From positions 62,001-126,000 of IMG/VR virus record IMGVR_UViG_3300043786_000977: a stretch of DNA of 64,000 nucleotides; one strand, written 5' to 3'. The notes under the pieces were generated by a model that was not told the DNA's origin, searched no databases, and saw only the letters and a list, made by a program, of their open reading frames with translations. The position numbers and the translations under genes are program-made. Within the stretch, counting starts at the first letter, position 1; each line of letters begins with the position of its first letter. Shown here piece after piece: positions 6,508 to 52,268 of this stretch.

Positions 6508-6517
6508 ATCGGAATAC

Positions 6518-6546
6518 ACAATACGAGATTGTGGTGCCGATGTCAA
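6518..6546 (-). promoter_or_regulatory. sigma70 promoter for terminase
   Basis: TTGACA-N17-TATTGT on the minus strand, ending 10 nt before ATG 6507. Confidence 0.75.
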
Positions 6547-6564
6547 CACACAAGCGGAGGATAG

Positions 6565-23144: not shown

Positions 23145-23728
23145 ATGTCACCGCCATGGCGCTCTGGGACACGTACTACGCGTACATGCACGAGCGCCAT
23201 GGCCGTCCCATGCCGCCGCATCAGTATGCAGGGGATACAGTGAATTGGCATAAGACATTCTGGCCCACGGCAGAACTGTGTTATGACAAACAGTGGGATC
23301 CCCAGGACTACGTAACGAACGTACTCGAACGCTTAACGATAAACCGTATCTACATCAAGCCGGCGTGTTTGCGTGATCACGAACGCCAGGATCAGTACCA
23401 GAAACAACTGATCAAGACGACAGTTGATTACGACATTGATACCGAATGGCATAGTCTGATCGAGGAACTACTTACCTATATGGCAGATGGTTCAAGCGAA
23501 AACAGTGTGCTGCTTAGTCCGATGACACCGTTTCCGGCTTGGTTTAGATTGGCATATCCCGAACGCTTAGACGAACAGTTATTCGGATTGTATGGACCAG
23601 CTGGACGTAAAGAATTTGCAGCCAATAGGCGGCTGCGTGATTTCGTACGAAAAGAATCATCAAAGACGTTTGCACAGCTTGAAGAACGCTGGGGCCGTTT
23701 CGGTGATTTGGAGGTATTAGTTCAATGA
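23084..23728 (+). CDS. Hypothetical protein in replication operon (start uncertain)
   Basis: Fills the gap between two helicases; ATGA overlap downstream. Confidence 0.6.
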   Translation: MGRGLKRIAVSRTTEDISRINVTAMALWDTYYAYMHERHGRPMPPHQYAGDTVNWHKTFWPTAELCYDKQWDPQDYVTNVLERLTINRIYIKPACLRDHERQDQYQKQLIKTTVDYDIDTEWHSLIEELLTYMADGSSENSVLLSPMTPFPAWFRLAYPERLDEQLFGLYGPAGRKEFAANRRLRDFVRKESSKTFAQLEERWGRFGDLEVLVQ

Positions 23729-25191
23729 TCTCACCTTATACACGCGACTTTCAGATACAGTTGTTGATTAACCTACTTCGGGACAAGAAGTTCTTCGAAG
23801 AGACCGTAGGTCGGTTACATCTAAGTGATTTCGATTTGCCGCCCTGCCGACTCATATTCGAGATCGCCAGGACGTATTTCCTAAAGCACCGAGAGTTACC
23901 GCCGTTCCGTGTGATCGAGTTGGAACTCATACAGACGCTTCAATATCCGTCACTGGAGTACGAGACTGTATTGCAGGAAGCGGAACACGAATCCCTAGCG
24001 GGCATCATGAGTATGTTCGCACGTAGCGCACCTTCCGACCTGGCGGTACCGTACTACCGTGAGAAACTGCACGGGTTCATGAGCCACATGCGGTTAGCTG
24101 CAGCCAAGGGCCTCGGATTGACGGCAGAGCAGGAGTTGGCGGAAAGCGTCCGTATCCATAGCGAGGTGTCCAAGGTAGGGCGTAATAGAGTGATCCTCGT
24201 GAACGCGACATCACGGCCGCCAGACATGTCAGCAGTGCTTGGCGGACGTATCGGTATAGGACTCAACAAGGTCGACAAGTTGATCAACTACGGGTTGACA
24301 TCGGGTCAGACAGGTATGGTCGTAGCATGTACGGGTATCGGTAAGACCAACACAGGGCTAAACATGTGCGTGGCCGCGGCGCTGAAGAACACGCGCTCGT
24401 TGTTCATGACACTCGAAAATACAGTGGATATGATTCATAATCGTATCTTCGGTATGTTTGCCCATATTGAAGCCCAACACCTGATTCAACGGTCGTTACT
24501 GGATAAGAACTCGGCATGGCGGCTTGACTTCGTAAGCGGCGATGCTTTCAGGTACCACAACTATATCACCATCGCGGACTGCACACAACGCCCGCATGGG
24601 GTGGATGACATAAAGGACATAATAAGCGTCTGGTTGGAAGACCAGATAGAACGGCTTGGACACAAGGAAGAAGAGTGTCGTCTGATTAATGTTGACTGGA
24701 TCGAGAAAATAGTCGATGCTGGTATCGTAGGGATACATAAGAACATGAGCACGGCAGACCGTATTAAGCATCGGATGGAAGCCCTTGCGGAAATCAATCG
24801 CAGTTTCAAGAAGATACTGTGGACTTCAACACAAGGAACACGAGCCGCACAGAATCATGAGATCATCGTACGCGGTGACATTGCAAATAGTATTCACGTG
24901 ATGGATCCGTTGGATCTGTGTATCGGATTGGCCCCGTCAGTAATCGCAACAGATACACGGGACGACGATGACGTAACGAATCCTGTTTGTGACCGGCGCT
25001 TGAACGTATCGCTGCTCAAGACACGAGAATCGGCAGCAACAGGTAGACATAGACAGGTTTATCAAGGAAAGACATTGCGGCTATGGGATGACGAGAGTCA
25101 ATTTACAGCCGCCACACAATTAGCTGACCAGTGCAACATGGACGGACTTCTGAAACTAATGGCACCACAATCAGTGACACCCGGTAAATAG
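23725..25191 (+). CDS. Replicative DnaB-like (SF4) helicase
   Basis: ACTGIGKT, MTLEN, INVDW, WTSTQ, LLKTRE. Confidence 0.85.
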   Translation: MISPYTRDFQIQLLINLLRDKKFFEETVGRLHLSDFDLPPCRLIFEIARTYFLKHRELPPFRVIELELIQTLQYPSLEYETVLQEAEHESLAGIMSMFARSAPSDLAVPYYREKLHGFMSHMRLAAAKGLGLTAEQELAESVRIHSEVSKVGRNRVILVNATSRPPDMSAVLGGRIGIGLNKVDKLINYGLTSGQTGMVVACTGIGKTNTGLNMCVAAALKNTRSLFMTLENTVDMIHNRIFGMFAHIEAQHLIQRSLLDKNSAWRLDFVSGDAFRYHNYITIADCTQRPHGVDDIKDIISVWLEDQIERLGHKEEECRLINVDWIEKIVDAGIVGIHKNMSTADRIKHRMEALAEINRSFKKILWTSTQGTRAAQNHEIIVRGDIANSIHVMDPLDLCIGLAPSVIATDTRDDDDVTNPVCDRRLNVSLLKTRESAATGRHRQVYQGKTLRLWDDESQFTAATQLADQCNMDGLLKLMAPQSVTPGK

Positions 25192-26192: not shown

Positions 26193-26507
26193 ATGAAGTC
26201 TTTATTAGCATATAAACTGTTGCGTGTGCGCAAGGATTCATCATTGGGTCCGTTGTTCATCAATTGTCGCCAGCGTATTGAACCTGGCAAATGGTTAAAA
26301 GCGGAAGCCCATCGCCGGAAGGGTTATGCCTTCCGGCCGGGCTGGCACTGTACAGCGAAACCGTACGCCCCGCACTTGTCCACGAAAGGACGGGCGTGGT
26401 TTGCGGTACTCGTACGTGATTACGTGACCTACACTCGGCCTGCGGCACAAGGCGGTCAATGGATACTTGCGCAAAAAATGTGCGTATTACGCCTAGGTGT
26501 GCAATGA
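26193..26507 (+). CDS. Phage hypothetical protein
   Basis: AYKL...PLFIN...RPGWHC...QGGQW pattern. Confidence 0.65.
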   Translation: MKSLLAYKLLRVRKDSSLGPLFINCRQRIEPGKWLKAEAHRRKGYAFRPGWHCTAKPYAPHLSTKGRAWFAVLVRDYVTYTRPAAQGGQWILAQKMCVLRLGVQ

Positions 26508-29272
26508 CGAAGAAAGAAAAAGTAGAGGAACCGTCACCCTATCCGATATGGATGGATGAGACGGCACGGACTGTTGAAGGTAAAATATGGCTACGGGGAC
26601 GTGGACCCTTGCCGGCACCTTTCATGTTCGTCGGTGAACGGCCTCTGGAAAAAGAGGTCAAGGCAAAGCGGGTGTTTCACGGCGCCACCGGTGAATTACT
26701 TAATACACGGCTCGTGATGAATGGTTTCGATACTGCGTCTTGCTATCTGACAAACGCAGTCAAGTACCCGATCCCCCGAAACAAGAACGCGGCGGCCAAG
26801 GACTTGAAGGTGTGTCACGCGATGCTCGAAGAAGAAATCAAGCGCTGTAATCCGAAGGTGATCGTATGCCTAGGATCAGCTGCCCTGCGTGCAGTCGTGG
26901 GCCGTGATATGAACATATCCTCGATTCGAGGGGAGTTAGTACGTGATCCGGTGCGCAATGTAGACATACTTGCGATGCATAATCCGGCATACGTGTTACA
27001 CAATCCGGAAGTCATGGCTGCGTTCGATCGGGATATCTGTGAACTCGTAAGGTATCAGCGCGGCGAACAACCGATGCTGGACCCTGCCGACTGGGTCGAA
27101 ATCCGGACCGTGGCCTGGCTACGTGAATTCGTAGCCAGCGTCTTTGCGGAACAGGCGAATCCTGTTCTCGTAATAGACATGGAATGGAACGGTAAGACAT
27201 GGATGGATCCCGATCGGTATATTCGGACTATCCAGATCTGTCATAAACCGGGTCAAGCTGTGATTGTAGTCATGCGTGGCGAAAACGGTGTACCGGCAAT
27301 GGACGATGAACCGGAAGCCTGGAGAATTCTTAAGACGTTACTTGAGGATCCCCGGGTGGGTATCATCGGACATAATGCAATCGCGGATGGTCACTGGCTA
27401 CTCGGACAGAACATAGATATCCGACCACGTGTGATATGGGACACGATGCTCGCTGAGTTCCTGCTGCATGAGACAGGACCGTGGGGTCTGGAGGAGGTGA
27501 CACTACGGTACACAAATCACCGGCGCTACTCCCTAAACCTGGAGATGTGGGTAAATGAGCATAAGACTGAATGTAAACATGGTTACGGCCCCGTGCCCGA
27601 GAGCTTGTTGTTTCCATACGGGGCTATCGACGTAATAGGTCCACGGCAAATTGCTGAGAAGCAGTATCCGTTGGTCGCTGCCGAGTTTATGCAGCCCCGT
27701 GGATTACGCGGACAATATCCGAGCCTGTGGCAAACCACGTTGCGGACACAGGAACTGTTGTATGAGCTCGAACGTAACGGGATGGCCATAGATACGGAAC
27801 GTCTGGAGCAGCTCATCGTCGCATATCAACGTGTGCGTGCACAGTTACTGGGTGTTGTTACAACCGAGGCTGCTGCAGCTGGTTTCATTGAATTCAGTCC
27901 GACGTCCGTACAAGACGTTCAGAAGATGTTGTTTCAAGTTCTGAAACTCCCGCCTGTTAAAACAACCGAAGGGCGTGCCTGGGTTGATGACGTGGGTAAC
28001 CAGGGTTTGGATAATCCAACGGAATCGACACCGTCAACGGATAAGACAACACTTGAGATCCTGGAAGACGAACATGCCCTGGTACACCACCTACTGCAGT
28101 TTCGTCGAATTGATCAGAGTTGCAAGACATGGTTACGGCATCCTAAAGAGGGTGAAGATGAAGTCTCCAAGGGCGGAGGAATAGGTGCCAAGATCTGGGC
28201 AGATGGCAGGATTCATGCACGGTTTTCGCAACTAGCAGAAACCGGTCGTTTTCGTACAGCACAGCCCAATGTGCAGAACTGGCCCAAGAAGGCAGAAGGA
28301 TATATGGAAGAGATCTTCGGGAAGGACAATATGCCTCCCGGGATCCGGACTATTATCGTTCCTGCCCCTGGTTATGTTCTGATGGAAGGAGACTTCGTAC
28401 AGGCTGAGTTGTTCGTACTAGCTGCGCTTTCGGGCGATCAGAATATGATGTCGGCGTTAACGACACCGGGGCGCGACTTACACGACGTTACGGCGATAAC
28501 CGCATTCAAATTGAAGGTATACGATCCGCAAGGTAATGAGGTACCGGAATCCGTACTAATTGATCTTGCTAAGAAGAATCTACCAAAAGGATCCGAGAGT
28601 AAGGAGTTCAAGAGTTTCGTAAAGACACTACGTTACGTTGATCTGAGAGGCAAGGTGATGACACGTGACGAATTTAAAGAGACGATACGGGTGTCCGCAA
28701 AAAACGTGAATTTCGGGATTCCTTACGGACGCGGCGCGTTGGATATCGCTCGACAGGTCAAGGCCGAGACGGGCAGTAAGCAGACGATACAAGAACTCGA
28801 AACAGACTTGAGTGAGATTGTGCGTGTATGGAAAGAAGAAACATACGCGACAGCCTGGGCATACATGCGACGGTGTGCACAGTCTGTATACGATCCTGGG
28901 TATATCAAAAATCCCTGGGGTCGTTATCGCCGTTTCCCTCGAGCACGAAATGACGAAGAACGTGCTGACGTGGAGCGTCAGGCACAGAATTTCCCGATTC
29001 AATCCACAGTTGCGGACACGGCGATGATCGCCATGGACCTGATTGCGCGATATAGGGAAGCGAACGGATTACATTTCCGTATTGTGAACCAAATTCACGA
29101 TGCGGTAATGATCGAAACACCAATTGACGAAATCGACCAGTGCAAACTTATGTACGGTGATACAATGGGCGCTATCGACATTCCAGTAGGACCACCATTC
29201 AACATACTACGATTAGGCGTTGACATGAAAATACTAACTCGCTGGGGTGAAGAAGCCAAATCAAAAGACTAG
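26504..29272 (+). CDS. polA: Family A DNA polymerase with N-terminal uracil-DNA-glycosylase-like domain and 3'-5' exonuclease
   Basis: VGERP/TNAVK/HNPAY UDG-like domain; DME, GHN..AD, YGAID exonuclease; TGR, DFVQAE, KNVNFGIPYG, IHDA polymerase motifs. Confidence 0.95.
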   Translation: MTKKEKVEEPSPYPIWMDETARTVEGKIWLRGRGPLPAPFMFVGERPLEKEVKAKRVFHGATGELLNTRLVMNGFDTASCYLTNAVKYPIPRNKNAAAKDLKVCHAMLEEEIKRCNPKVIVCLGSAALRAVVGRDMNISSIRGELVRDPVRNVDILAMHNPAYVLHNPEVMAAFDRDICELVRYQRGEQPMLDPADWVEIRTVAWLREFVASVFAEQANPVLVIDMEWNGKTWMDPDRYIRTIQICHKPGQAVIVVMRGENGVPAMDDEPEAWRILKTLLEDPRVGIIGHNAIADGHWLLGQNIDIRPRVIWDTMLAEFLLHETGPWGLEEVTLRYTNHRRYSLNLEMWVNEHKTECKHGYGPVPESLLFPYGAIDVIGPRQIAEKQYPLVAAEFMQPRGLRGQYPSLWQTTLRTQELLYELERNGMAIDTERLEQLIVAYQRVRAQLLGVVTTEAAAAGFIEFSPTSVQDVQKMLFQVLKLPPVKTTEGRAWVDDVGNQGLDNPTESTPSTDKTTLEILEDEHALVHHLLQFRRIDQSCKTWLRHPKEGEDEVSKGGGIGAKIWADGRIHARFSQLAETGRFRTAQPNVQNWPKKAEGYMEEIFGKDNMPPGIRTIIVPAPGYVLMEGDFVQAELFVLAALSGDQNMMSALTTPGRDLHDVTAITAFKLKVYDPQGNEVPESVLIDLAKKNLPKGSESKEFKSFVKTLRYVDLRGKVMTRDEFKETIRVSAKNVNFGIPYGRGALDIARQVKAETGSKQTIQELETDLSEIVRVWKEETYATAWAYMRRCAQSVYDPGYIKNPWGRYRRFPRARNDEERADVERQAQNFPIQSTVADTAMIAMDLIARYREANGLHFRIVNQIHDAVMIETPIDEIDQCKLMYGDTMGAIDIPVGPPFNILRLGVDMKILTRWGEEAKSKD

Positions 29273-33013: not shown

Positions 33014-33838
33014 ATGTCACTGCCACTAATAACTACCGAACAATTTGCAACCGTCTACATGACCACAAGGCTGAATGATGCGCGGCTCACCGACATGCCG
33101 CCACTGCACGTGACGGAAATACCCAGTGAGATGCGTCGCCTTTACAAGGACGAAGGAACTGCGATGACTGCCCGTTGGTGGGACGTATATCGCGATGTGG
33201 TTCAACTATCGTTTCACTACAGGGGTGAGTATCATCATTTCCTGCTTTGTGAAGAACATACAAGCACGTCAGAATCACTGCTGAAATCACACGTCCACAT
33301 CTACGACGACGAGGAAGCGTTAATCAAGGGAGCATTCGAATTCCTACGCGAATTCTTTGGTCCTGCGACTGCTAGCGGTGCACCGCTCTACACGCGTCTG
33401 CTGATAGGTTGGCGTATGCACATCGAAGTTTGGCCGGTGCTCGTTAATCGTGCGATCAAGTATCGGATTCCGTTATACAGAGAGATGTTGACCGACCCCG
33501 ATAGTAAGTGGCCTACGATTAGACATCTTGGTGATGTAGCTTCCTTATATCTACAGGGCGGCGGCGGATTACGTAGATTACCGGGACTACCTGACCTACT
33601 GAGGTTCTGGGGATTTTGGGGCGAGGATGAACACATTCCTTTACCCGAAGACCTCGAAACTGCGGTATGTACGGATCCCTACGGTGTGGTTAAACACGTC
33701 GAAAAGTACCTGACAGCCATGCACGATGTCATGTGCGTTTACTATCAACAGAACACAGATACACAAGTTGATACACCATTCAACGCAGGAATGGCGGTTC
33801 CAGCGATATTACCGTATGGTCCGCCACCGATAGGATAG
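33014..33838 (+). CDS. Probably inactive DnaQ/PolB-type exonuclease-fold protein
   Basis: DEEALIKGAFEF...LIGW....WPVLVNRAIKY...HLGD resembles the Exo II region but lacks the acidic residues. Confidence 0.45.
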   Translation: MSLPLITTEQFATVYMTTRLNDARLTDMPPLHVTEIPSEMRRLYKDEGTAMTARWWDVYRDVVQLSFHYRGEYHHFLLCEEHTSTSESLLKSHVHIYDDEEALIKGAFEFLREFFGPATASGAPLYTRLLIGWRMHIEVWPVLVNRAIKYRIPLYREMLTDPDSKWPTIRHLGDVASLYLQGGGGLRRLPGLPDLLRFWGFWGEDEHIPLPEDLETAVCTDPYGVVKHVEKYLTAMHDVMCVYYQQNTDTQVDTPFNAGMAVPAILPYGPPPIG

Positions 33839-33847
33839 GAATTAGTT

Positions 33848-34042
33848 ATGGCCGAACATGATGATCCAGCAAATAACTCAGTACCGCAACGTAGTCCGGA
33901 AGAACTACGCATGGCCTTGCAGGAATGCACCAAGCGCCAGATCGCCCTCAAGGACCTCAAGAAGGCGACAGCAAAGGATTACGCGGATCAGATCAAAGAA
34001 ATCGATCACGAGATCGCAGACATACTGGCACAACTGGGTTGA
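33848..34042 (+). CDS. Small coiled-coil protein
   Basis: AGGA RBS; heptad pattern. Confidence 0.65.
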   Translation: MAEHDDPANNSVPQRSPEELRMALQECTKRQIALKDLKKATAKDYADQIKEIDHEIADILAQLG

Positions 34043-34049
34043 TGGAGAA

Positions 34050-34075
34050 GGGGAGCGGGAGCGATCCTGCTCCCC
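34050..34075 (+). terminator. Stem-loop with GNRA loop
   Basis: GGGGAGCGGGA-GCGA-TCCTGCTCCCC. Confidence 0.6.
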
Positions 34076-34084
34076 AAACTTACT

Positions 34085-34420
34085 ATGCAAATCTGGTATA
34101 GATGTTCAAGTCGACAAATTACACCCGTAGCCGTAGCCCGCTTTACGCTTTATAATGTCTGGTTGGCTGATATGCCGGCACGCGCAAGCATGCACTCCCG
34201 TAGTTCAAGCTACGAGAGTTACTGTCCAACCTTCGAGGAGGCGCAGCAGGTTATACTCACTGAATTAGACGCGACGATTGCGTATAACCACCGTAAGATC
34301 AGGTGTCTGCAAGAGGACTGTGCACGCGCAGAACAGCGCCGTGAACAAATAAGAGCCATGACAGCACCTGTTTATAATCCTCCGATACCACTACCACAAG
34401 ATTTAAGCAAGTTGGTTTAA
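34085..34420 (+). CDS. Hypothetical protein
   Basis: ORF fills gap. Confidence 0.5.
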   Translation: MQIWYRCSSRQITPVAVARFTLYNVWLADMPARASMHSRSSSYESYCPTFEEAQQVILTELDATIAYNHRKIRCLQEDCARAEQRREQIRAMTAPVYNPPIPLPQDLSKLV

Positions 34421-34421
34421 T

Positions 34422-34865
34422 ATGGCAGACTTCGACACGTTGAATGATTCAGGGGAACGACGTACATTTGCTAGTGGTGCACAGCGGGATCGCGGTAAAG
34501 ACAAAACCAGACCCGACCTAGTATCACCGTTTTTTCTCCAACGCCTGGGCTGGCACATGATGTTGGGCGCACGTAAATATTCCGCGAATAATTGGGCTAA
34601 GGGCATGCCCAATAGTGAGTTCTGGGCCTCACTTAATCGACACGTTGCGCAGGCTGCTGTAGGTGATACATCCGAAGATCACCTATCTGCTATTGCCTTC
34701 AACGTCATGGGTATTATCCACAATCAAGAGATGAAAAAACTGGGTTTGCTGAAACCTGAGTTTGACGACTGGCCCGTAAACTGGGGCGAGTTAACGGGTA
34801 TGGGTCCACGTGTGGCGCCTGAACCCCCAATCACACGCGCTGTCGATCCTAAACCCGGAGTTTGA
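34422..34865 (+). CDS. dATP/dGTP diphosphohydrolase-like protein (DUF5664)
   Basis: FASGAQRD..K.RPDL, GARKYSANNWAKG, SLNRH, EDHL..IAFN. Confidence 0.85.
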   Translation: MADFDTLNDSGERRTFASGAQRDRGKDKTRPDLVSPFFLQRLGWHMMLGARKYSANNWAKGMPNSEFWASLNRHVAQAAVGDTSEDHLSAIAFNVMGIIHNQEMKKLGLLKPEFDDWPVNWGELTGMGPRVAPEPPITRAVDPKPGV

Positions 34866-34866
34866 G

Positions 34867-35556
34867 ATGCAAACGGATACAGCGACACAACATCTCGACA
34901 GCATTCGGCCGGTAGAGGTCGAGCGGTATTCCAGGTACCTGGTTAACATCGCGCCAAAAACGCACAAGGATCTCTTCCAGCGTTGGCTCTTTGCCTATGC
35001 CAGTGTCCACACGACCTGGACATTGAACTGTAAATTGTACCGGTTATTGGCGCCTATGACCTGGTTGGGTGACACGAATCAATTGAAGGACTTGATCATC
35101 AAATCGGGTGCAGGATTACACAACAACCGCACCCGGTATATCATGCAGTTCTCCGATTGGTTCTGGGCACATCCCGATTGGTTTTGGCGTTCGACGCATG
35201 AGAACTGGACCCAGTATCGTGACCGTATAATGGATGCGGCTCTGGGTATCGGACGGGCTAAGTCCAGTTTCGTTGTCGAGATGACCTACCCAGTACCTGC
35301 GGAGGTTATCTGTACAGACACGCATATCATGCAACTGTACGGTATGACACCCAAGGATATAGCAAGCGGGAAGATAAACGATAAGACAGAAGCAGCAATG
35401 GAAACCCACTGGGTCGCTGCTTGTCGGGAACGTAAACTACCGCCCGTGATTAGCCGTTGGGTTTATTGGGACCGTAAGCAAGGCTACAGTGACAGTCGTT
35501 ACTGGTCATTCGTATTCGAGCAGGAAAACTATCACGAAACGCTTAACATCAAATAA
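34867..35556 (+). CDS. HhH-GPD DNA glycosylase-fold protein
   Basis: GLHNNR, LGIGRAKSSF, VICTDTH. Confidence 0.75.
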   Translation: MQTDTATQHLDSIRPVEVERYSRYLVNIAPKTHKDLFQRWLFAYASVHTTWTLNCKLYRLLAPMTWLGDTNQLKDLIIKSGAGLHNNRTRYIMQFSDWFWAHPDWFWRSTHENWTQYRDRIMDAALGIGRAKSSFVVEMTYPVPAEVICTDTHIMQLYGMTPKDIASGKINDKTEAAMETHWVAACRERKLPPVISRWVYWDRKQGYSDSRYWSFVFEQENYHETLNIK

Positions 35557-35564
35557 GGCTGATA

Positions 35565-35996
35565 ATGGCAACTGATTGGAGTAAACTACCCGTATTACGG
35601 AATGACAAACTGTTGTTCCAGGACACGTCCATGGCTCCTCTGCCCGGTGGCATTGTTCCATGTCTGTTATGCTGTAAGCCTTTCCTCATGGGTTTCTTCA
35701 TCGGAACTCCCGATCAACTGTGTCCTGAATGCGAGAAGCTATACAAGGACACCGCGAAGGTGATCTGCGTACGATGCCGACCGCCTGTGACAATCTGTCG
35801 CCTGATACCCAAGATACTGGACAACGGATTCTATATCCGTCCCAAGTCCGTGTTGCATTCGGATTGTTGCAATGTATGCAAACCTGGACTTACGGCATCG
35901 TCAATATTGGAGATTGAAGAATGGGAACGGAAACGTCGACCGGGCAAGCTGATACTACCAGTTGGGAAATCTGCCTCAACGAAACAGAGCACATAA
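35565..35996 (+). CDS. Cys-rich Zn-binding protein
   Basis: Four CxxC pairs. Confidence 0.65.
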   Translation: MATDWSKLPVLRNDKLLFQDTSMAPLPGGIVPCLLCCKPFLMGFFIGTPDQLCPECEKLYKDTAKVICVRCRPPVTICRLIPKILDNGFYIRPKSVLHSDCCNVCKPGLTASSILEIEEWERKRRPGKLILPVGKSASTKQST

Positions 35997-36835
35997 AACT
36001 GATTGGTAGCATCGAGACTGTACTGGATAAGTTGGGCCTCGAGTTACCCAACAAAGGGAAGACCAACTACGGATCTGAAATCACGGCACTCGCCGGAGCA
36101 CTGAACCGCTTCGGGCATAATGTCGGGCTGTGGACAGCAGAGTATGGTAACGGGCAGGAGATACTGCAGAAACACTTGACGTTTACGCTCATGGTACCCG
36201 GCGGTAGAGCGAGCCGTGTGCGTGACGCAGTAAACCTAATGAGTCAACGCAATGTCCTGCCGGTACTTCCCGGGCAGCCCGTACAGTCGTTGTTGTTAAG
36301 ACAGATCATTGCGCCGTTGGTACGTTTTCCCAATCAAAAGGCGGAACGTGTTGTTACTGCGCTTCGAGGTTGGGACTCTTACATAGTTCCGGTCGTGTGT
36401 AAGCATATAGCTTTACCGGCTAACCAACTACGTAAGATCGTGATGGAAAGTGTGGTCGGCTTTGGCGAAAAAGCTGCATCACATTTCATGCGCAATACAG
36501 GATTGATGAGAGGATGGTCGGCACTCCCCATCATTGACACGCATATTCATAAAGCGTTGGAGGTCTATCAACTTCCACATAAAGGGTACCCGGACGCCGA
36601 GTGCTCTTTCACAGCGTTGGCGACAAAGACGGGTATTCCCCCGTTGCTGCTCGATGCCGTGTTGTGGTGTGCTTATGCCAAGAACTGGGACGTTACACAC
36701 TCTGACTTCGATAACTTCGGATACACAACAGTAATCAATAAACAAGAACAAGGACACAGTAATGAAAGAAATCATGGATCTCGTAGCACAAATTCACAGG
36801 ACACTCGCAGCCAAGGGGCTGGTAGCCACACCTGA
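35921..36835 (+). CDS. N-glycosylase/DNA lyase (Ogg2-like HhH) protein
   Basis: RFPNQKA, GFGEKAASHFMRNTG, IIDTHI, LDAVLW. Confidence 0.85.
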   Translation: MGTETSTGQADTTSWEICLNETEHIKLIGSIETVLDKLGLELPNKGKTNYGSEITALAGALNRFGHNVGLWTAEYGNGQEILQKHLTFTLMVPGGRASRVRDAVNLMSQRNVLPVLPGQPVQSLLLRQIIAPLVRFPNQKAERVVTALRGWDSYIVPVVCKHIALPANQLRKIVMESVVGFGEKAASHFMRNTGLMRGWSALPIIDTHIHKALEVYQLPHKGYPDAECSFTALATKTGIPPLLLDAVLWCAYAKNWDVTHSDFDNFGYTTVINKQEQGHSNERNHGSRSTNSQDTRSQGAGSHT

Positions 36836-38099
36836 TACACAGGAACCGGCTGCCGTTCCCTTGACCAACCAGACACTCGACACGCCACCGTACGGGATAG
36901 CAGAGTACGTGTCGTGCATTACACCTGCAGAGCAGCTGTCCAACGTAACAGTTGTAGCAGCGCTTCCGCCTAAGGTTGAAGTTTTAGGGATTGCGGCGGG
37001 CAACATAGCCGGGATTAACCTGGCCAAGATCGAGGAACTGGCGTCGACAGCTACTCCCGATCCGGAATCACAGCAAGAGCTCGTGTCAAGTGTGACTCAG
37101 GCACACGTGACGGCGTTCGCCACGTGGTTCATAAATCTCCTCTGCGGGTTGAGTAAAAATCAGGCAACCCTGGAACTCACAAAGCGCGGGTATTGCACGG
37201 ATGATGAGGCGATAGCGTTCTTGGCAAACCTTAAGCCGCCTGTCCTCCCGCAGACTGAATTCGAGCATAGGATAACAGCTGAATTCAATCAGATGGTAAC
37301 GTGGGTGAACGCTGATATGGAAGCTGAAGCCATCAGGGCAGGCAACCAAGACAGCTTCGCACACAAAGCGCTTGCACAATGGCGCATTACACGTACCCAG
37401 GGCCGGCAACTGTATAAGGCGCTACGTGCGACCCTGTCTGCTGCCAAACGCTGGCCACAGCCGGTGGGCGGTACGTTTGCCCAGCAGGCGGAGGCCATGG
37501 CTGATGCCAAGATTGAACAGCACCAGGATCCCGCAAAGGGTCAGGCACAGAAGCAACTGAAGATGGACAGCGCAGCCAATCAGCACGGTTCCTGGGTACA
37601 GATCGCACGCCGTACGGGACGTGACCTGGCACAGAACGGGCCTATCAGCGTGGACGATATCACAGAAGCCATGAGCCGCCAGTATAAGGTGGCCCCGGGC
37701 GAAGGTGATAAGGCGCACAACTGGAAGGGCAGCATCTTCACGACATCCGAATGGGTGGCCGTGGGTCAGATCGCCTCCCGACTCCCAGAAGCGCACGGGC
37801 GCCCGGTCACACTATGGGCGTTGAAGACATGGCTGGAAGCGAACACGTTAAACGGACGCGGGGATGCCACGTCTGCGTTTAATATGGTCAAGATCTACAA
37901 CGATTTCAAACGGGCGCATCCCGGTATGGCCCTGGAACGCTGTAATTGGTACATCGGTGAGGAACGGCTGGCAACAGATATCCGGGACTCGATTGTAAGT
38001 GGGAGCAATAAGCTCTACGGTATCCCGGTCGCATTTATGCCGGGCGCTGTCGGCGCGGCACTGCTTCCGCCAGATTATGCAGCGCAACGCAAGGTCTAA
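36762..38099 (+). CDS. Hypothetical protein with winged-helix-like region
   Basis: ISVDDI...WKGSIF...SR.PEAHGRPVTLW. Confidence 0.6.
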   Translation: MKEIMDLVAQIHRTLAAKGLVATPDTQEPAAVPLTNQTLDTPPYGIAEYVSCITPAEQLSNVTVVAALPPKVEVLGIAAGNIAGINLAKIEELASTATPDPESQQELVSSVTQAHVTAFATWFINLLCGLSKNQATLELTKRGYCTDDEAIAFLANLKPPVLPQTEFEHRITAEFNQMVTWVNADMEAEAIRAGNQDSFAHKALAQWRITRTQGRQLYKALRATLSAAKRWPQPVGGTFAQQAEAMADAKIEQHQDPAKGQAQKQLKMDSAANQHGSWVQIARRTGRDLAQNGPISVDDITEAMSRQYKVAPGEGDKAHNWKGSIFTTSEWVAVGQIASRLPEAHGRPVTLWALKTWLEANTLNGRGDATSAFNMVKIYNDFKRAHPGMALERCNWYIGEERLATDIRDSIVSGSNKLYGIPVAFMPGAVGAALLPPDYAAQRKV

Positions 38100-38126
38100 T
38101 ACCAACAATCAACAGGAGAACACACA

Positions 38127-38237
38127 ATGGCGAAGTGCACAAAGTGTGGCAAAGGTGGTCGTGGACGTCCCGCAAAGGACGGTCTCTGCAAGAAGTGCCG
38201 TAAGGCTGCAGAGAAGGCCGCCGGCGCCATGAAGTAA
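38127..38237 (+). CDS. 36-aa Zn-knuckle/AT-hook microprotein, not in ORF track
   Basis: AGGAG RBS; MAKCTKCGKGGRGRPAKDGLCKKCRKAAEKAAGAMK; downstream hairpin. Confidence 0.7.
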   Translation: MAKCTKCGKGGRGRPAKDGLCKKCRKAAEKAAGAMK

Positions 38238-38246
38238 CGCGTCGAA

Positions 38247-38271
38247 GGGTACGGCTTGTGAGGCCGTACCC
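38247..38271 (+). terminator. Stem-loop
   Basis: GGGTACGGCT-TGTGA-GGCCGTACCC. Confidence 0.6.
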
Positions 38272-38297
38272 CTCACTTAACAAATACAAGATGTGAT

Positions 38298-39041
38298 ATG
38301 GCCCTACGAAAAACCACAGCAGAGTTTATTGCAGATGCTATTGCTAAACACGCAAAGAGGTATAACTACTCACGTGTAGTCTATGTGAACAACAGAACAC
38401 CAGTCGAGATATGCGACACAGTTTGCGGTACTTGGTTCTGGCAAACACCACAAAATCACTTAACAGGTTTGGGATGTCCACACTGCGCCCGTTATGAACG
38501 CAAGACAACAGCAGCGTTTATCACAGAGGCTATTGCTGTACATAGTGTTGAACCGGGACGTTATGTCTACTCACGGGTAGTTTATAAGCGGGCCAAGATA
38601 CCAGTCGAGATATTCGACACAGTTTGTGGTAATTGGTTCTGGCAAACACCACAAAATCACTTAAGTGGGCATGGATGTCCGCACTGCAGTCGTAGTGTTT
38701 CTATGGCGGCTAAGATATGGTTAACCAGTATGGGATTACCTGATGATACGCGACACAGAGAAGTAACGGTTGCGGGTCGTTACAAGGTAGATGGTTACGA
38801 TCCTGAACATAAGATCGTATATGAGTTTTTAGGGGCTCTGTGGCATGGGCATCCGTCGGTTCCCCACAGACATCCAAATAAACGCACGCATGCTGAAAAT
38901 TGGTCGGCGACTGAACAACGTCTATTGGCTATTCGTGATGCGTTACCCGACTGGGAAATACGTTACGTCTGGGGCTTCGGTGCGGTGCGTAAAGGTGCCG
39001 TCAGCCCTATACACGTTTTTGACGGTAAACTGAAAGCATAA
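38298..39041 (+). CDS. Free-standing endonuclease with two DUF723-like repeats and a PD-(D/E)xK-like domain
   Basis: Two KTTAxFI...Y.YSRVVY...HL.G.GCPHC repeats; VDGYD...YEF.G..WHG. Confidence 0.8.
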   Translation: MALRKTTAEFIADAIAKHAKRYNYSRVVYVNNRTPVEICDTVCGTWFWQTPQNHLTGLGCPHCARYERKTTAAFITEAIAVHSVEPGRYVYSRVVYKRAKIPVEIFDTVCGNWFWQTPQNHLSGHGCPHCSRSVSMAAKIWLTSMGLPDDTRHREVTVAGRYKVDGYDPEHKIVYEFLGALWHGHPSVPHRHPNKRTHAENWSATEQRLLAIRDALPDWEIRYVWGFGAVRKGAVSPIHVFDGKLKA

Positions 39042-39051
39042 GGAACAAAAC

Positions 39052-40176
39052 ATGAACAAGACATTTCCAACACTCTACAAACTCACAGGCACAGGCGAGG
39101 TCCAGGAATGGACGATCATCGTTGAAGGCAACAAGATCTTCACCCGGTTCGGCCGGCACGGTGGCAAGATCCAGGAGTCCGCTCCTGACGTGATTACTGA
39201 AGGTAAGAACACAGGCAAGAAGCACGCCCGTGACCCCGAGATGCAGGCTGCGTCCGAGGCACAGTCCAAATGGGAGAAGAATCTCAAGAAGGGGTACGTT
39301 GACTCAATCGAAGCTGCCAAGGCAGGTGCCGTCAGTGACCTGGTAGAAGGTGGCGTATGGCCCATGCTGGCGAAGGTTTACAGTAAGGCGGGTAGCAAAA
39401 TAAAGTGGCCCGCGGCGTGTCAACCGAAACTAGATGGCCATCGCTGTATCGCAATCGTGGACGCAAAGGGTAAGTGTACCTTGTGGTCACGTACGCGTAA
39501 ACCGATAAACAGCCTACCGCACATCGTACGTGCAATCGAAGCGACCGGCGTACGTAACGTCACGTTGGACGGTGAGGCCTATAATGCCGATTACCACGAT
39601 CGGTTTCAAGAGTTGTCGCACTTCATCCGGCAGTCTGAGCCTATTGAAGGTTGTGAGGCGGTGAAGTATCACATTTATGACACAGCAGCATCCGAAAACT
39701 TCGCGTTCAGGACGGCCTGGTTGGCCCAGTGGTTACCAAAAGATACGGACGTACTGGTGCGCGTGGAGACTATACTCGTAGCGAACGAGGATGAACTCAT
39801 GGCCGCGTTCGCACATTATCGCTCCCAAAAGTACGAAGGGTGCATGGTACGTAATCTCGGCGGTTTGTACGAGGGGCATCCTACGCACAGGAGCAACGAC
39901 CTTCAAAAAGTCAAAGCGTTTCAAGATGACGATTGGCCGATTGTCGGTGTTGTAGCGGGGCGCGGCAAACTAGCCGACTGCGGTATATTCGTATGCGAGA
40001 CGAAGAGTGGTAAACGTTTTGAGGCAAAGATGATCGGAGAACTCACTGAACTCAAGCAGTATCTGAAGCACCCGGAGCAGTTTATTGGGAAACTGCTGAC
40101 GGTGCAGTATCAGGGATTGACCGACGACGGGTTGCCCCGGTTCCCTGTTGCGTTACGTATTCGCGAAGATCTATAG
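39052..40176 (+). CDS. lig: ATP-dependent DNA ligase with WGR-like N-terminal domain
   Basis: QPKLDGHRC, LDGE, YEGCMVR, KVK, PRFP. Confidence 0.95.
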   Translation: MNKTFPTLYKLTGTGEVQEWTIIVEGNKIFTRFGRHGGKIQESAPDVITEGKNTGKKHARDPEMQAASEAQSKWEKNLKKGYVDSIEAAKAGAVSDLVEGGVWPMLAKVYSKAGSKIKWPAACQPKLDGHRCIAIVDAKGKCTLWSRTRKPINSLPHIVRAIEATGVRNVTLDGEAYNADYHDRFQELSHFIRQSEPIEGCEAVKYHIYDTAASENFAFRTAWLAQWLPKDTDVLVRVETILVANEDELMAAFAHYRSQKYEGCMVRNLGGLYEGHPTHRSNDLQKVKAFQDDDWPIVGVVAGRGKLADCGIFVCETKSGKRFEAKMIGELTELKQYLKHPEQFIGKLLTVQYQGLTDDGLPRFPVALRIREDL

Positions 40177-40699
40177 TACCACGGGTACGCAGGTATGCGG
40201 CCGCCTTTTCGAGTAGCTCCGGACTATCTTGTAAGTGACCCATACCTGTGTTACACGTACCGCAGAGTAGTCCTCGTATTTTTCCTGTTTTATGGTCGTG
40301 ATCTACAGCAAGAGGACGTTTACGTGGTTTTCGTCCACATATAAGACACCGATTATGTTGTAAGGCACATAAAACAGCGTAACCGCCTTCGGGTAGGCTG
40401 AAAAAACGTTCTGTACGTAACTGTAGTACACGTTGCTTATTTTGCTGATACCACAGCCGCGCCTGCTCTCTGTGTCTATCCTTATTAGCTTCAGCCCACT
40501 TTCGTTTATACGCTTTGATGCGTTCAGCGTGTTTCAGGTACGTGCGTTGCGCGTGTGTCTTTGTTAGTTCTGGGTGCGCTTTACGCCATTCTTGTTGATA
40601 CGTCCGCATCCCATCGGGGTCAGCGGCGCGTCTACGGCGCATGTAGTCACGACGTTCAATACGTTTAGACTCAGCTGTTTGCCTGGTATGTGTTTTCAT
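40082..40699 (-). CDS. Endonuclease VII-like (HNH) free-standing endonuclease
   Basis: CLICG...VDHDHKTGKIRGLLCGTCN; 3' end overlaps the ligase convergently. Confidence 0.88.
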   Translation of the reverse strand: MKTHTRQTAESKRIERRDYMRRRRAADPDGMRTYQQEWRKAHPELTKTHAQRTYLKHAERIKAYKRKWAEANKDRHREQARLWYQQNKQRVLQLRTERFFSLPEGGYAVLCALQHNRCLICGRKPRKRPLAVDHDHKTGKIRGLLCGTCNTGMGHLQDSPELLEKAAAYLRTRGTIDLREYVTQQGTGATRRRSIPDTAPSAVSQ

Positions 40700-44943: not shown

Positions 44944-45143
44944 AACGACTCAAAAGTGTCGAGACCGAGCAGTATGCGCTTGAAGTTGTTGAATGCGATT
45001 GCGGTTTTCATCTCGGTGTGGATGCCTCATATCTTGACCAGGTAGGTGATGTTGTCATAGCCTGCCCGAGTTGTAGCGCACAAATTGACACAACAAAAGT
45101 ATTCACGGAAGACTTTCCGGGTGCCACAAGAAAGGCAACATGA
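44940..45143 (+). CDS. Small Zn-ribbon protein
   Basis: CDCG...CPSC; ATGA overlaps at both ends. Confidence 0.6.
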   Translation: MKRLKSVETEQYALEVVECDCGFHLGVDASYLDQVGDVVIACPSCSAQIDTTKVFTEDFPGATRKAT

Positions 45144-45622
45144 AGATATATCTTGCACGACCGATAAGTGGATGTACGGCTGACGAGGTGTTCACGTACT
45201 ATGATAACCTGTCTAAGCAGTTACGCACGGCCGGATTCACTGTATTCCATCCAATGTACGGTAAGGATCAACTGCGTACCGACGTCAGGTTCAAGGCTGC
45301 TGACTATCGGCATCCGGCGTCCACCAACCATGCGATCATCGAACGCGACCGTTGGATGGTGACGCAGGCTGATGTAGTCTATGCCAATTTGATGCATGCA
45401 ACCTGTGTGTCCATCGGTACAGTGATGGAACTGGCCTGGGCACATCAGTTGGGTAGACATACTGTGTTGGCTATGAATACAAGTAATATACACGCCCATG
45501 CCTTCGTTAACGAGGCCGCGGATGTGATATGGCCGACCCACGAAGAAGCAGTCGATTACCTATATACGTTAGTACCGCCTGCAATATCTACAGGATGCTG
45601 TGGTCATGGCAACGATCACTGA
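45140..45622 (+). CDS. Nucleoside 2-deoxyribosyltransferase-like protein
   Basis: KIYLA.PI, ERD...V..AD, SIGTVMELAWA. Confidence 0.88.
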   Translation: MKIYLARPISGCTADEVFTYYDNLSKQLRTAGFTVFHPMYGKDQLRTDVRFKAADYRHPASTNHAIIERDRWMVTQADVVYANLMHATCVSIGTVMELAWAHQLGRHTVLAMNTSNIHAHAFVNEAADVIWPTHEEAVDYLYTLVPPAISTGCCGHGNDH

Positions 45623-50805: not shown

Positions 50806-51234
50806 ATGAGTATCGAAACTAAGACCATTCACAATGACGAATTACGCGTGCTGACAGACCTCCTGACAATACTGACGCCAGAGACAACGGACATGGATCC
50901 CCTCAAGTTGACCGTGCTATTACGCCGCGCCGAGGTGTTCCTTGCTGACTGGCGCACGCACCTGCGCACGGAGGCCAACAGCGCCTATGTTCAGTTGCAG
51001 GGCTCTAAGCCCGATCAACGGACATGGCCGATCGAGGACTTGGCGCTCCTGACAAACTATACGCCGGCCGGTAGTTGGTCTTATCCTCCTGACATCGTTA
51101 AACTGATAGGCGAGGTTAAGGCCAAGCAAGAACTCGCCAAGCAGCAGAAGACAGCCACGATGGTGGCGGCGCCCCGTCCCGATCCGACACAAGTGGCGCT
51201 ATTCGCAATCAGTCTCAAGGACACACCCGCATGA
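50806..51234 (+). CDS. Hypothetical protein
   Basis: Operon-packed ORF. Confidence 0.55.
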   Translation: MSIETKTIHNDELRVLTDLLTILTPETTDMDPLKLTVLLRRAEVFLADWRTHLRTEANSAYVQLQGSKPDQRTWPIEDLALLTNYTPAGSWSYPPDIVKLIGEVKAKQELAKQQKTATMVAAPRPDPTQVALFAISLKDTPA

Positions 51235-52256: not shown

Positions 52257-52268
52257 ATATATGCACAC

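What the first reader, a model, noticed from the sequence alone, without database searches (positions are those of the whole stretch)
34422..36835. dNTPase plus two divergent HhH glycosylase paralogs plus a Zn protein: possible base-modification or base-discrimination module
Seen: a DUF5664-type gene, an HhH protein with GIGRAK (Lys shifted one position), a 4xCxxC protein, and an Ogg2-like protein with canonical GFGEK...DTH, all tightly packed. ThyX, dCMP deaminase and a deoxyribosyltransferase lie elsewhere in the window. Known: HhH-fold proteins have been repurposed in phages as DNA-hypermodifying transferases, and dNTPases remove canonical nucleotides in modified-base phages. Inference: this cluster installs a modification, removes host-installed base adducts, or attacks DNA of a different chemistry. 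No modified-base synthase is visible in this window.
Basis: partly seen in the sequence, partly recalled or inferred. Interest (0 to 1): 0.6.

Follow-up and report, generated by a model that had tools for sequence, protein, structure and literature searches.

The report
Two phage Ogg2-like DNA glycosylases
A 209-kb lake-water phage carries, inside its DNA replication and repair genes, two very divergent relatives of the 8-oxoguanine repair enzyme Ogg2, a small zinc protein and a nucleotide-cleaning enzyme. These are separate accessory genes rather than a DNA-modification machine, and most likely cut damaged bases out of DNA, although neither enzyme has the part that Ogg2 uses to recognise 8-oxoguanine.

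Summary
The interpretation as one base-modification or base-discrimination module is not borne out.

- **Not a cassette.** In syntenic relatives the DUF5664 gene, protein A and protein B come and go independently. Only the zinc protein and the following 445-aa gene are constant.
- **No modification pathway.** The complete genome has no TGT/DpdA, ThyA-type hydroxymethylase, 5-hmU DNA kinase, Tet/JBP, DatZ, PurB or DNA methyltransferase of the two families searched. A PurA-like gene lies 444 nt beyond the window end. It keeps the Asp that every phage PurZ replaces by Ser, and three complete relatives lack it.
- **Both HhH proteins have the Ogg2 fold.** B keeps the canonical Lys/Asp pair. A belongs to a large, essentially virus-only family (475 IMG/VR loci) with an invariant Asp, an invariant Ala at the canonical Lys position and an invariant Lys one residue later.
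- **Substrate open.** Neither has the C-terminal lysine that Ogg2 uses to sense 8-oxoG.

Best reading: two base-excision glycosylases in a replication/repair module, plus a dNTP pyrophosphohydrolase and a zinc-ribbon protein of unknown role. This is a new variant of a known kind, of moderate interest.

The parts
34422..34865 (+). DUF5664 / dGTP_diPhyd_N protein (147 aa): predicted dNTP pyrophosphohydrolase. It is an accessory gene, variable among relatives.
   Evidence: PF18909 at E 5.5e-16 and PHROG 801. A stand-alone DUF5664 of Arthrobacter phage Wayne hydrolyses dATP, dGTP and dUTP to dNMPs (PMC12884076). Among relatives a homologue was found only in L008; a dNMP kinase sits just upstream of A in L001, and in L012 upstream of a slot where no A was found.
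34867..35556 (+). Protein A (229 aa): divergent Ogg2-fold HhH protein of a virus-only family. HhH hairpin GIGRAK at nt 35245-35262; Asp151/His153 at nt 35311-35325.
   Evidence: Pfam Ogg-HhH is only E 0.029, but the family profile matches MjaOgg over its full length at E 4e-6. AF2 pLDDT is 94.4. Top Foldseek hits are 3fhf, 3knt, 3n0u and 3fhg, TM 0.64-0.75. Invariant residues include A131, K132, D151 and H153. There are 475 IMG/VR loci.
35565..35996 (+). Zinc protein (143 aa): two predicted Cys4-type zinc ribbons. Core gene of this phage clade; function unknown.
   Evidence: Invariant C33, C36, C53, C56, C68, C102 and C105. 52 homologues at 44-94% identity. 216 representatives, all small stand-alone proteins. 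No Pfam or PHROG family. Present in every syntenic relative, with or without A and B.
35921..36835 (+). Protein B (304 aa): Ogg2-like DNA glycosylase/AP lyase with the canonical GxGxK...D pair. GFGEK at nt 36458-36472; IIDTH at nt 36530-36544. The first ~13 and last ~35 residues are modelled with low confidence and lie in the overlaps with neighbouring genes.
   Evidence: PF22175 at E 8.1e-15. PDB Ogg 9o00 at E 4.6e-4 for the single sequence and 6e-10 for the profile. AF2 pLDDT is 84.4. Foldseek finds Ogg2 structures at TMt 0.73-0.77. The best Atlas cluster is Ogg-HhH at TM 0.83. Invariant K184, D206 and H208.
36762..38099 (+). 445-aa protein of unknown function: conserved backbone gene that follows Zn (or B) in relatives.
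   Evidence: No Pfam or PHROG match and no usable Atlas lead. Homologues follow Zn or B in L002, L008, L009, L010 and L018.
39052..40176 (+). ATP-dependent DNA ligase: nearby repair partner. A ligase recurs near A-family genes in other phages.
   Evidence: PF01068 and PF14743. A ligase lies immediately upstream of A in 65 of 92 loci, but only in 2 of 11 lineages at 55% identity. It lies within 6 kb in 5 of 11 lineages.
26459..29272 (+). Family A DNA polymerase with an N-terminal UDG-superfamily domain and a 3'-5' exonuclease: start of the syntenic replication/repair backbone.
   Evidence: PF03167, PF01612 and PF00476. Conserved in L001, L002 and L018.

Best explanation
The finding is a stretch of the replication/recombination/repair module of a complete 208,908-bp freshwater phage. 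It is not a dedicated modification cassette.

**Proteins A and B** are two independent, deeply diverged branches of the Ogg2-type HhH-GPD fold. B keeps the canonical catalytic pair, with the Lys at G-x-G-x-K and the Asp 22 residues later. I predict (inference) that it flips a damaged base out of the helix, cleaves the glycosidic bond through a Lys Schiff base, and nicks the AP site.

A keeps the Asp and the fold. It has an invariant Ala at the canonical Lys position and an invariant Lys one residue later. I infer that it is an active glycosylase; whether it is also a lyase is unknown.

Their pocket-forming C-terminal segments differ from each other and from Ogg2 (A: DSRYW; B: SDFDNF). They probably therefore take different lesions, and those need not include 8-oxoG.

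The nicks would be processed and sealed by phage or host enzymes. A UDG-PolA fusion and an ATP-dependent ligase are nearby.

**The DUF5664 protein** is a separate accessory dNTP pyrophosphohydrolase that cleans or reshapes the dNTP pool.

**The zinc protein** is a core clade gene of unknown role. Its link to A and B is positional: overlapping reading frames, hence probable translational coupling.

*Shown:* folds, conserved residues, synteny, and the absence of known modification genes. *Inferred:* enzyme activity, substrates, and the repair role.
For: **Fold and catalytic residues.**
- Both models match the solved Ogg2 structures best.
- Both family profiles hit Ogg2 chains in the PDB.
- B has invariant K184, D206 and H208 across 24 homologues.
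- A has invariant A131, K132, D151 and H153 across 36 homologues.

**Context.**
- The conserved backbone runs PolA, g473, RecA-like, g194, g160, g307, g64, a variable slot, A, Zn, B or nothing, g445, an optional HNH gene, then ligase.
- SbcCD-like genes, helicases and a DnaB-like gene lie upstream.
- A-family genes in unrelated phages also sit in replication modules, often beside an ATP-dependent ligase.

**No modification pathway in the complete, DTR-bounded genome**. ThyX and dCMP deaminase indicate ordinary dTMP supply.

**Habitat.** The phage is found in lake water, where virion DNA would plausibly be exposed to light and oxidants (for the habitat; the exposure is inference).

**DUF5664.** Its activity on dATP, dGTP and dUTP, and its presence in phages with canonical genomes, are published (PMC12884076).
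Against: - No activity was measured.
[quoted passage not shown] The classic substrate therefore cannot be assumed.
- The Lys of A is displaced, and I could not measure its distance to the Asp in the model.
- A and B are patchily distributed among close relatives. That pattern is also typical of arms-race genes.
- No AP endonuclease was looked for.
- A PurA-like gene of unknown role sits just outside the window.
Confidence: 0.55

Rival explanations
1. Counter-defence or base discrimination. A and/or B excise a specific non-canonical base rather than random damage. Candidates are a host-installed adduct on phage DNA (ADP-ribosylated or deaminated bases) or a host epigenetic mark.
For: - Both lack the Ogg2 8-oxoG sensor and have their own conserved pocket motifs.
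- A and B are gained and lost independently among close relatives.
- A is a virus-only family, absent from isolate genomes.
- HhH/Ogg-like domains are used as sensors of modified bases in phage-host conflict (PMC12191111).
Against: - No partner gene points to a particular adduct.
- The placement is in a replication/repair module next to ligase, not in an early or anti-defence block.
- Attack on host DNA would need a self-protecting modification, and no pathway for one was found.
Confidence: 0.17
2. Hypermodification transferases. A and B are a paralogous pair of aGPT-Pplase-like HhH enzymes that attach a group to phage DNA.
For: aGPT-Pplases have a glycosylase-like HhH fold and often occur as paralogous pairs (PMC8989533). 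A glycosyltransferase and a GP88-family gene lie 15 kb downstream.
Against: - No aGPT-Pplase Pfam match at E <= 0.1.
- No similarity to any GenBank phage by tblastn, which includes the phages known to carry aGPT-Pplases.
- The viral 'amino acid:DNA transferase' fold is only rank 23 at TM 0.31/0.26.
- No 5-HMUDK, ThyA-type hydroxymethylase or Tet/JBP in the complete genome.
- The Asp (with Lys) of glycosylases is invariant.
- A and B are not co-inherited.
Confidence: 0.04
3. Purine-substituted genome. The PurA-like gene, DUF5664 and the NDT-like gene make a non-canonical purine (2-aminoadenine or similar), and A and B purge the canonical base.
For: - A PurA homologue lies 444 nt past the window end, at E 6.4e-55.
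- DUF5664 and NDT-like genes accompany PurZ0 in Z-genome phages (PMC12884076; bioRxiv 10.1101/2025.10.22.683976).
- A UDG domain is fused to PolA.
Against: - The PurA-like protein keeps Asp13 (GDETKG). This residue is Ser in 100% of phage PurZ/PurZ0.
- It is far closer to bacterial PurA than to phiVC8 PurZ.
- Its best phage relatives are the PurA-like genes of Mycobacterium phages such as I3, Tonenili and Rizal, at 41%.
- No DatZ or PurB.
- Three complete relatives have no PurA homologue; all three carry Zn, one also A (L015) and one also B (L012).
Confidence: 0.04
4. A, Zn and B form one complex, with the zinc protein as a DNA-binding or regulatory subunit of the glycosylases.
For: Zn lies between A and B with overlapping frames. 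The Zn/B overlap of 58-97 nt is conserved in all four B-carrying relatives.
Against: - Zn occurs without A or B in L013, L014 and L096.
- A occurs without Zn in about 80 loci.
- No fusions were found among 216 Zn representatives.
Confidence: 0.15

Closest known systems
OGG2 subfamily 8-oxoguanine DNA glycosylase/AP lyases (M. jannaschii Ogg 3FHF/3KNT, T. maritima Tm1821 3N0U, S. solfataricus Ogg 3FHG; Pfam PF22175 Ogg-HhH)
   Same: - Two-domain all-helical HhH-GPD fold without the OGG1 A-domain.
- The Asp before the helix that follows the HhH, and the conserved Trp near the C-terminus, are kept in both proteins.
- B keeps the G-x-G-x-K catalytic Lys and the SHF-MRN helix motif.

   Different: - Neither ends with the strictly conserved C-terminal Lys that senses N7-H of 8-oxoG. 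Both have longer tails with family-specific motifs (A: DSRYW; B: SDFDNF).
- A has Ala at the catalytic Lys position and Lys one residue later, and falls below the Pfam gathering score.
- B has an extra N-terminal helical segment of about 70-80 residues.
- Both are viral.
aGPT-Pplase / amino acid:DNA transferases of thymidine-hypermodifying phages (M6 gp51, ViI, SP10)
   Same: Phage-encoded, glycosylase-like HhH fold, sometimes found as a pair of paralogues (PMC8989533).
   Different: - No sequence or profile match.
- Poor fold match, TM about 0.3.
- No 5-HMUDK and no 5-hmdU source in the genome.
DUF5664 dNTP pyrophosphohydrolase of Arthrobacter phage Wayne, and the DUF5664-DUF550 enzyme of Acinetobacter phage SH-Ab 15497
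   Same: Same Pfam domain, and stand-alone like the Wayne enzyme. Published activity converts dATP/dGTP (and dUTP) to dNMP plus PPi (PMC12884076).
   Different: Here it is not accompanied by PurZ, DatZ or DutZ. The paper notes that DUF5664-like proteins also occur in Arthrobacter phages with canonical genomes.
Inactivated EndoIII/Ogg-like sensor domains of END nucleases (anti-phage defence)
   Same: An HhH/Ogg-like domain used in phage-host conflict to read non-canonical bases (PMC12191111).
   Different: Those are host-encoded, lack the catalytic residues and are fused to nucleases. A and B are phage-encoded, stand-alone, and keep the Asp (plus a Lys).

Membership tests
OGG2 (Ogg2-type 8-oxoG glycosylase/AP lyase) | Two-domain HhH-GPD fold lacking the OGG1 A-domain | tested here: met
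   - A: AF2 pLDDT 94.4; the top seven PDB hits are all Ogg2 structures, TM 0.64-0.75.
- B: pLDDT 84.4; the top seven are Ogg2 structures, TMt 0.73-0.77. The Atlas Ogg-HhH cluster scores TM 0.83.
OGG2 (Ogg2-type 8-oxoG glycosylase/AP lyase) | Pfam PF22175 Ogg-HhH above the gathering score (27 bits) | tested here: inconclusive
   B: 55.2 bits, met. A: 14.3 bits at E 0.029, not met. The A-family profile still aligns to MjaOgg over its full length at E 4e-6.
OGG2 (Ogg2-type 8-oxoG glycosylase/AP lyase) | Catalytic Lys at the fifth position of G-x-G-x-K, and a catalytic Asp about 20 residues later | tested here: inconclusive
   - B: K184 and D206 are invariant in 24 sequences, so the feature is met.
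- A: D151 is invariant, but the canonical Lys position is an invariant Ala131. The invariant Lys132 lies one column later, so the Lys is not met.
OGG2 (Ogg2-type 8-oxoG glycosylase/AP lyase) | Strictly conserved C-terminal lysine whose carboxylate senses N7-H of 8-oxoG (PMC3397491) | tested here: not met
   Both families continue well past the conserved Trp, by about 15-70 residues, and their ends are variable. What is conserved instead are internal motifs: A R211-Y212-W213, and B D262-F263-(D264, nearly invariant)-N265-F266.
OGG2 (Ogg2-type 8-oxoG glycosylase/AP lyase) | Excision of 8-oxoG and AP-lyase activity | not testable with these tools
   Needs enzyme assays.
aGPT-Pplase / amino acid:DNA transferase | Match to the Pfam aGPT-Pplase models, or sequence similarity to known members | tested here: not met
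   Pfam returns only Ogg-HhH at E <= 0.1. tblastn of A and B finds nothing in 50,697 phage records. The BFVD transferase-domain protein ranks 23rd, prob 0.30, TM 0.31/0.26.
aGPT-Pplase / amino acid:DNA transferase | Co-occurrence with 5-hmU DNA kinase and a source of 5-hmdU | tested here: not met
   No HMUDK_hel PF18723, no ThyA family PF00303 and no Tet_JBP PF12851 in the complete genome. ThyX is present.
Z-genome cluster (PurZ/PurZ0 with DatZ or DutZ/DmtZ and a dATP/dGTP pyrophosphohydrolase) | PurZ: a PurA homologue with Ser in place of Asp13 (100% of phage PurZ; PMC12884076) | tested here: not met
   The PurA-like protein L003:1483-2748 reads GDETKG aligned to GDEGKG of E. coli PurA, so Asp is kept. 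E is 1e-28 to bacterial PurA against 5e-4 to phiVC8 PurZ.
Z-genome cluster (PurZ/PurZ0 with DatZ or DutZ/DmtZ and a dATP/dGTP pyrophosphohydrolase) | DatZ (YfbR-like HD dATPase) | tested here: not met
   PF12917 has no match in the genome at E <= 0.1.
Z-genome cluster (PurZ/PurZ0 with DatZ or DutZ/DmtZ and a dATP/dGTP pyrophosphohydrolase) | dATP/dGTP pyrophosphohydrolase (DUF5664, DUF550 or MazZ) | tested here: met
   PF18909 at E 5.5e-16. The domain also occurs in phages with canonical genomes.
DUF5664 / dGTP_diPhyd_N (PF18909) | Profile match above the gathering score over most of the domain | tested here: met
   58.8 bits against 27; model positions 2-92 of 99.

The most novel reading that the evidence does not exclude
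A, the 475-locus virus-only family with the displaced lysine, and/or B are not oxidative-damage repair enzymes. Instead they are phage glycosylases tuned to a specific non-canonical base. Candidates are an adduct that a host defence installs on phage DNA, or a host-specific mark. That would make them a widespread and so far unrecognised class of phage counter-defence or host-DNA-discriminating glycosylases.
Probability: 0.17. Interest if true: 0.75.

Novelty: new variant of a known kind. Interest (0 to 1): 0.38.

Why it matters
HhH glycosylases are textbook cellular repair enzymes, and in phage-host conflict they are mostly known from the host side.

This work defines a large family that is virus-restricted as far as these searches show: 475 IMG/VR loci, no PHROG, below the Pfam threshold, and in species genomes only on MAG contigs. 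It has the Ogg2 fold, a rearranged catalytic lysine and no 8-oxoG sensor. A rarer sister branch keeps the canonical chemistry.

If they are repair enzymes, they show that many environmental phages bring their own base-excision step. If their substrates are specific modified bases, they would be new tools and a new layer of the arms race.

The result also removes a tempting but unsupported 'modified-genome' reading of this phage.

Tried and rejected
- **Complex prediction on A + Zn:** no verdict (score 0.00, controls not run). This is not evidence either way.
- **GenBank phages:** blastn of the region and tblastn of A and B found no match.
- **Feature and structure atlas:** for Zn it returned only generic small zinc-ribbon clusters, and for the 445-aa protein nothing usable.
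- **Exhaustive representative search with the Zn profile:** 216 small stand-alone proteins and no informative fusion. Three distant members were looked up, and no glycosylase was seen beside them.
- **Promoter and terminator scan of 33700-40400:** nothing above shuffled expectation.
- **Ligase adjacency of A:** it looked strong (65 of 92 loci) but shrank to 2 of 11 lineages after dereplication.
- **L012:4551-5231 as a diverged A:** rejected (hhalign probability 0.1%).
- **The genome search 'relatives':** not available for a virus record.
- **Model coordinates:** they are not exposed to scripts, so the Lys132-Asp151 distance in A could not be measured.
- **Read laying:** not used. Nothing in the question depended on read-level data.
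Full report
**What is there**

The window is bases 62001-126000 of a complete, single-contig virus record of 208,908 bp with direct terminal repeats. Nearly all genes lie on the + strand. The finding's four genes exist exactly as described.

| Gene | Coordinates | Size | Key evidence |
|---|---|---|---|
| DUF5664 | 34422-34865 | 147 aa | PF18909 dGTP_diPhyd_N, E 5.5e-16; PHROG 801 dATP/dGTP pyrophosphohydrolase |
| A | 34867-35556 | 229 aa | GIGRAK at residues 127-132, CTDTH at 149-153 |
| Zn | 35565-35996 | 143 aa | four CxxC motifs |
| B | 35921-36835 | 304 aa | GFGEK at 180-184, IIDTH at 204-208; PF22175 Ogg-HhH, E 8.1e-15 |

The ATG of A lies one base after the upstream stop, and homologues support this start rather than the GTG at 34810.

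Zn and B overlap by 76 nt, and B overlaps the next gene (36762-38099, 445 aa) by 74 nt. Both downstream starts have good Shine-Dalgarno sequences. The ATG of B at 35921 is confirmed by a conserved N-terminus, MGTxTxT, in its homologues.

That conservation is probably imposed by the other reading frame. The B start codon sits inside the codons for the Glu-Trp pair (E119-W120) of the Zn protein, where W120 is nearly invariant. The first 13 residues of B are modelled with pLDDT below 50.

**What A and B are**

Each was folded with an alignment of its own homologues.
- A gave pLDDT 94.4. Its seven best PDB matches are all Ogg2 structures (M. jannaschii, T. maritima, S. solfataricus), with TM 0.64-0.75. 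EndoIII, OGG1 and MagIII follow far behind.
- B gave pLDDT 84.4, with low confidence only in the first 13 and last ~35 residues. It has the same top seven, TMt 0.73-0.77. Its best Atlas cluster is an archaeal Ogg-HhH family at TM 0.83.

By sequence:
- The B profile hits Ogg chains at E 6e-10.
- The A profile aligns to M. jannaschii Ogg over its whole length at E 4e-6.
- A and B are related to each other only weakly: hhalign probability 53% over 86 columns around the HhH-Asp region. They are separate old branches, not recent paralogues.

**Catalytic residues**

In 24 B-family sequences K184, D206 and H208 are invariant, together with RFPxQK and HFMRNTG motifs. This is the canonical Lys/Asp dyad of a bifunctional glycosylase/lyase.

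In 36 A-family sequences D151 and H153 are invariant. The canonical lysine column is an invariant alanine (A131), and the next residue is an invariant lysine (K132).

DSSP on the models agrees with this. The second HhH helix starts at residue 183 in B, with Lys second in the helix. It starts at residue 130 in A, with Lys third. Whether K132 can still reach C1' is an inference I could not test, because model coordinates are not exposed.

**The Ogg2 8-oxoG sensor is missing**

The review of the three OGG subfamilies states that Ogg2 enzymes have a strictly conserved C-terminal lysine. Its carboxylate accepts the N7-H bond of 8-oxoG, and removing it abolishes 8-oxoG excision while sparing lyase activity (PMC3397491).

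Both phage families run on past the conserved Trp (W201 in A, W249 in B) with longer tails. Those tails carry their own conserved motifs, DSRYW in A and SDFDNF in B, and have variable ends. So both proteins work like Ogg2-type HhH glycosylases, but neither passes the membership test for 8-oxoG-specific Ogg2. The substrates are open.

**Is it a module?**

No. I fetched syntenic relatives from metagenomes and IMG/VR and mapped the window's genes onto them. The conserved backbone is:

PolA(UDG fusion) - g473 - RecA-like - g194 - g160 - g307 - g64 - [variable slot] - A - Zn - [B or nothing] - g445 - [HNH] - ligase.

- The variable slot holds DUF5664 in the window and in L008. It holds a dNMP kinase in L001 and L012.
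- B is present in the window, L001, L002 and L012. It is absent from L008, L009, L010, L015 and L018, which keep A-Zn.
- L012 has Zn-B without a recognisable A.
- L013 and L014 have Zn with neither.

Zn is also the best conserved of the three, at 44-94% identity in 52 homologues. It has remote stand-alone relatives in contexts without glycosylases.

A is a very large family: 475 IMG/VR loci, on contigs from about 40 kb to 358 kb. It almost always occurs without Zn or B (80 of the loci examined). It is essentially viral. Across 185,579 species genomes only 11 loci were found, all on MAG contigs from scattered phyla. There is no PHROG and no GenBank phage match.

B is rare, with 27 clusters in the 5.8-billion-protein set and 4 IMG/VR loci.

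**Context of A elsewhere**

In other phages A sits in replication modules. An ATP-dependent ligase lies immediately upstream in 65 of 92 loci. After dereplication at 55% identity that is only 2 of 11 lineages, with a ligase within 6 kb in 5 of 11. The link to nick sealing is suggestive, not strong. Examples are L006 (ligase overlapping A) and L007.

**Is the genome modified?**

I searched the complete genome for the known routes. None of the following was found:
- TGT/DpdA
- ThyA-type hydroxymethylase
- N6/N4 methyltransferase
- PurB
- 5-hmU DNA kinase
- DatZ
- Tet/JBP
- C5 methyltransferase

ThyX and dCMP deaminase point to ordinary dTMP supply.

The one surprise is a PurA homologue at genome 126444-127448, 444 nt past the window end. 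Its P-loop reads GDETKG, so it keeps Asp13. A 2026 survey found Asp13 in 99% of PurA, and Ser in its place in 100% of phage PurZ and PurZ0 (PMC12884076). Mutating that Ser to Asp abolishes dGMP selectivity (bioRxiv 10.1101/2025.10.22.683976).

The protein is much closer to bacterial PurA (E 1e-28) than to phiVC8 PurZ (E 5e-4). Its best phage relatives are the PurA-like genes of Mycobacterium phages such as I3, Tonenili and Rizal, at 41%. Three complete relatives of this phage have no PurA homologue at all, although all three carry Zn, one with A (L015) and one with B (L012). The glycosylases are therefore not tied to it.

**The aGPT-Pplase idea**

Here that reading fails on every testable feature:
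- no Pfam aGPT-Pplase match;
- no similarity to any GenBank phage;
- a viral 'amino acid:DNA transferase' fold only at rank 23, with TM about 0.3;
- no kinase and no 5-hmdU source.

**DUF5664**

A stand-alone DUF5664 protein of Arthrobacter phage Wayne converts dATP, dGTP and dUTP to dNMPs. DUF5664-like proteins also occur in Arthrobacter phages with canonical genomes (PMC12884076). Here it is an accessory pool-shaping or house-cleaning enzyme.

**The zinc protein**

Seven cysteines are invariant, consistent with two zinc ribbons. The eighth ligand is Cys71 or, in some homologues, lies in a His-containing loop. No family, fold lead or fusion was found. The complex prediction with A gave no verdict. 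Its role is unknown. The conserved 58-97-nt overlap with B suggests translational coupling only.

**Habitat**

The stretch is held by lake-water and freshwater metagenomes from 2016 to 2024. Four runs from four studies hold half or more of its sampled words, and one of these may be the source sample.

**Verdict**

The module interpretation is only partly supported.

The best-supported explanation (confidence about 0.55) is that A and B are two base-excision glycosylases of the Ogg2 fold, embedded in a phage replication/repair module, with unknown and probably different substrates. DUF5664 and Zn are independent neighbours.

The main rival (about 0.17) is that one or both target a specific adduct or mark in the phage-host conflict. 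Hypermodification and Z-genome readings are each at about 0.04.

No alternative genetic code was used.

Noticed in passing
just outside the window: genome 126444-127448 (= L003:1483-2748, + strand), 444 nt after window base 64000: A PurA-like adenylosuccinate synthetase (421 aa, PF00709 E 6.4e-55) that keeps Asp13 (GDETKG) but diverges after residue ~340, where PurA binds GTP. Its best phage relatives are the PurA-like genes of Mycobacterium phages such as I3, Tonenili and Rizal (41%), which RefSeq labels '2-aminooxy adenylosuccinate synthetase'. It is absent from three complete relatives. Function unknown.
   Followed up: partly
window 35921-35996 and 36762-36835; L001, L002, L012: Long dual-coding overlaps. 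Zn/B overlap by 76 nt here and 58-97 nt in relatives; B/g445 overlap by 74 nt. The B start codon lies inside the codons of the Glu-Trp pair (E119-W120) of Zn. Where B is absent, g445 follows Zn directly, sometimes with a short overlap.
   Followed up: partly
window 26459-29272: Family A DNA polymerase with an N-terminal UDG-superfamily domain and a 3'-5' exonuclease. The nearest GenBank relatives reach only about 23% identity (Bacillus phage SP-10, Serratia and Pseudomonas siphoviruses).
   Followed up: partly
window 45140-45622: Nucleoside 2-deoxyribosyltransferase-like gene (PF05014, E 7e-10). NDT-like enzymes act as dAMP hydrolase/transferases in PurZ0 phages, but no PurZ is present here.
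   Followed up: no
window 51231-54408: A run of a group-1 glycosyltransferase (51231-52256), a GP88-family protein (52269-53258) and a weak MptE-like match (53539-54408). This could be a glycosylation cluster; its target is unknown. A GP88 gene also occurs in the unrelated A-carrying phage L006.
   Followed up: no
window 62009-63058: 349-aa protein combining a DnaJ J-domain with a protein-kinase domain.
   Followed up: no
window 38298-39041; L012:5310-5984: HNH-type endonuclease genes, probably homing endonucleases, are inserted at different points of the same backbone. Here one lies between g445 and ligase. In L012 one lies just upstream of Zn, where A would be.
   Followed up: partly
L090:4727-5404 and 21 other IMG/VR loci: In one large A-family lineage the gene immediately upstream of A is a 225-aa protein with weak sulfotransferase-like matches (E 8.5e-5). 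Its identity is unresolved.
   Followed up: no
window 11642-12754 and 14096-16279: SbcD-like phosphoesterase and SbcC/SMC-like ATPase, then helicases (21597-23144, 23725-25191). The left half of the window is a large replication/recombination block. The terminase large subunit is the only long minus-strand gene (4678-6549).
   Followed up: no
window 34000-38000: Near-identical DNA occurs in lake-water and freshwater metagenomes sampled from 2016 to 2024, across several studies. The phage is a persistent freshwater lineage; its host is unknown.
   Followed up: partly
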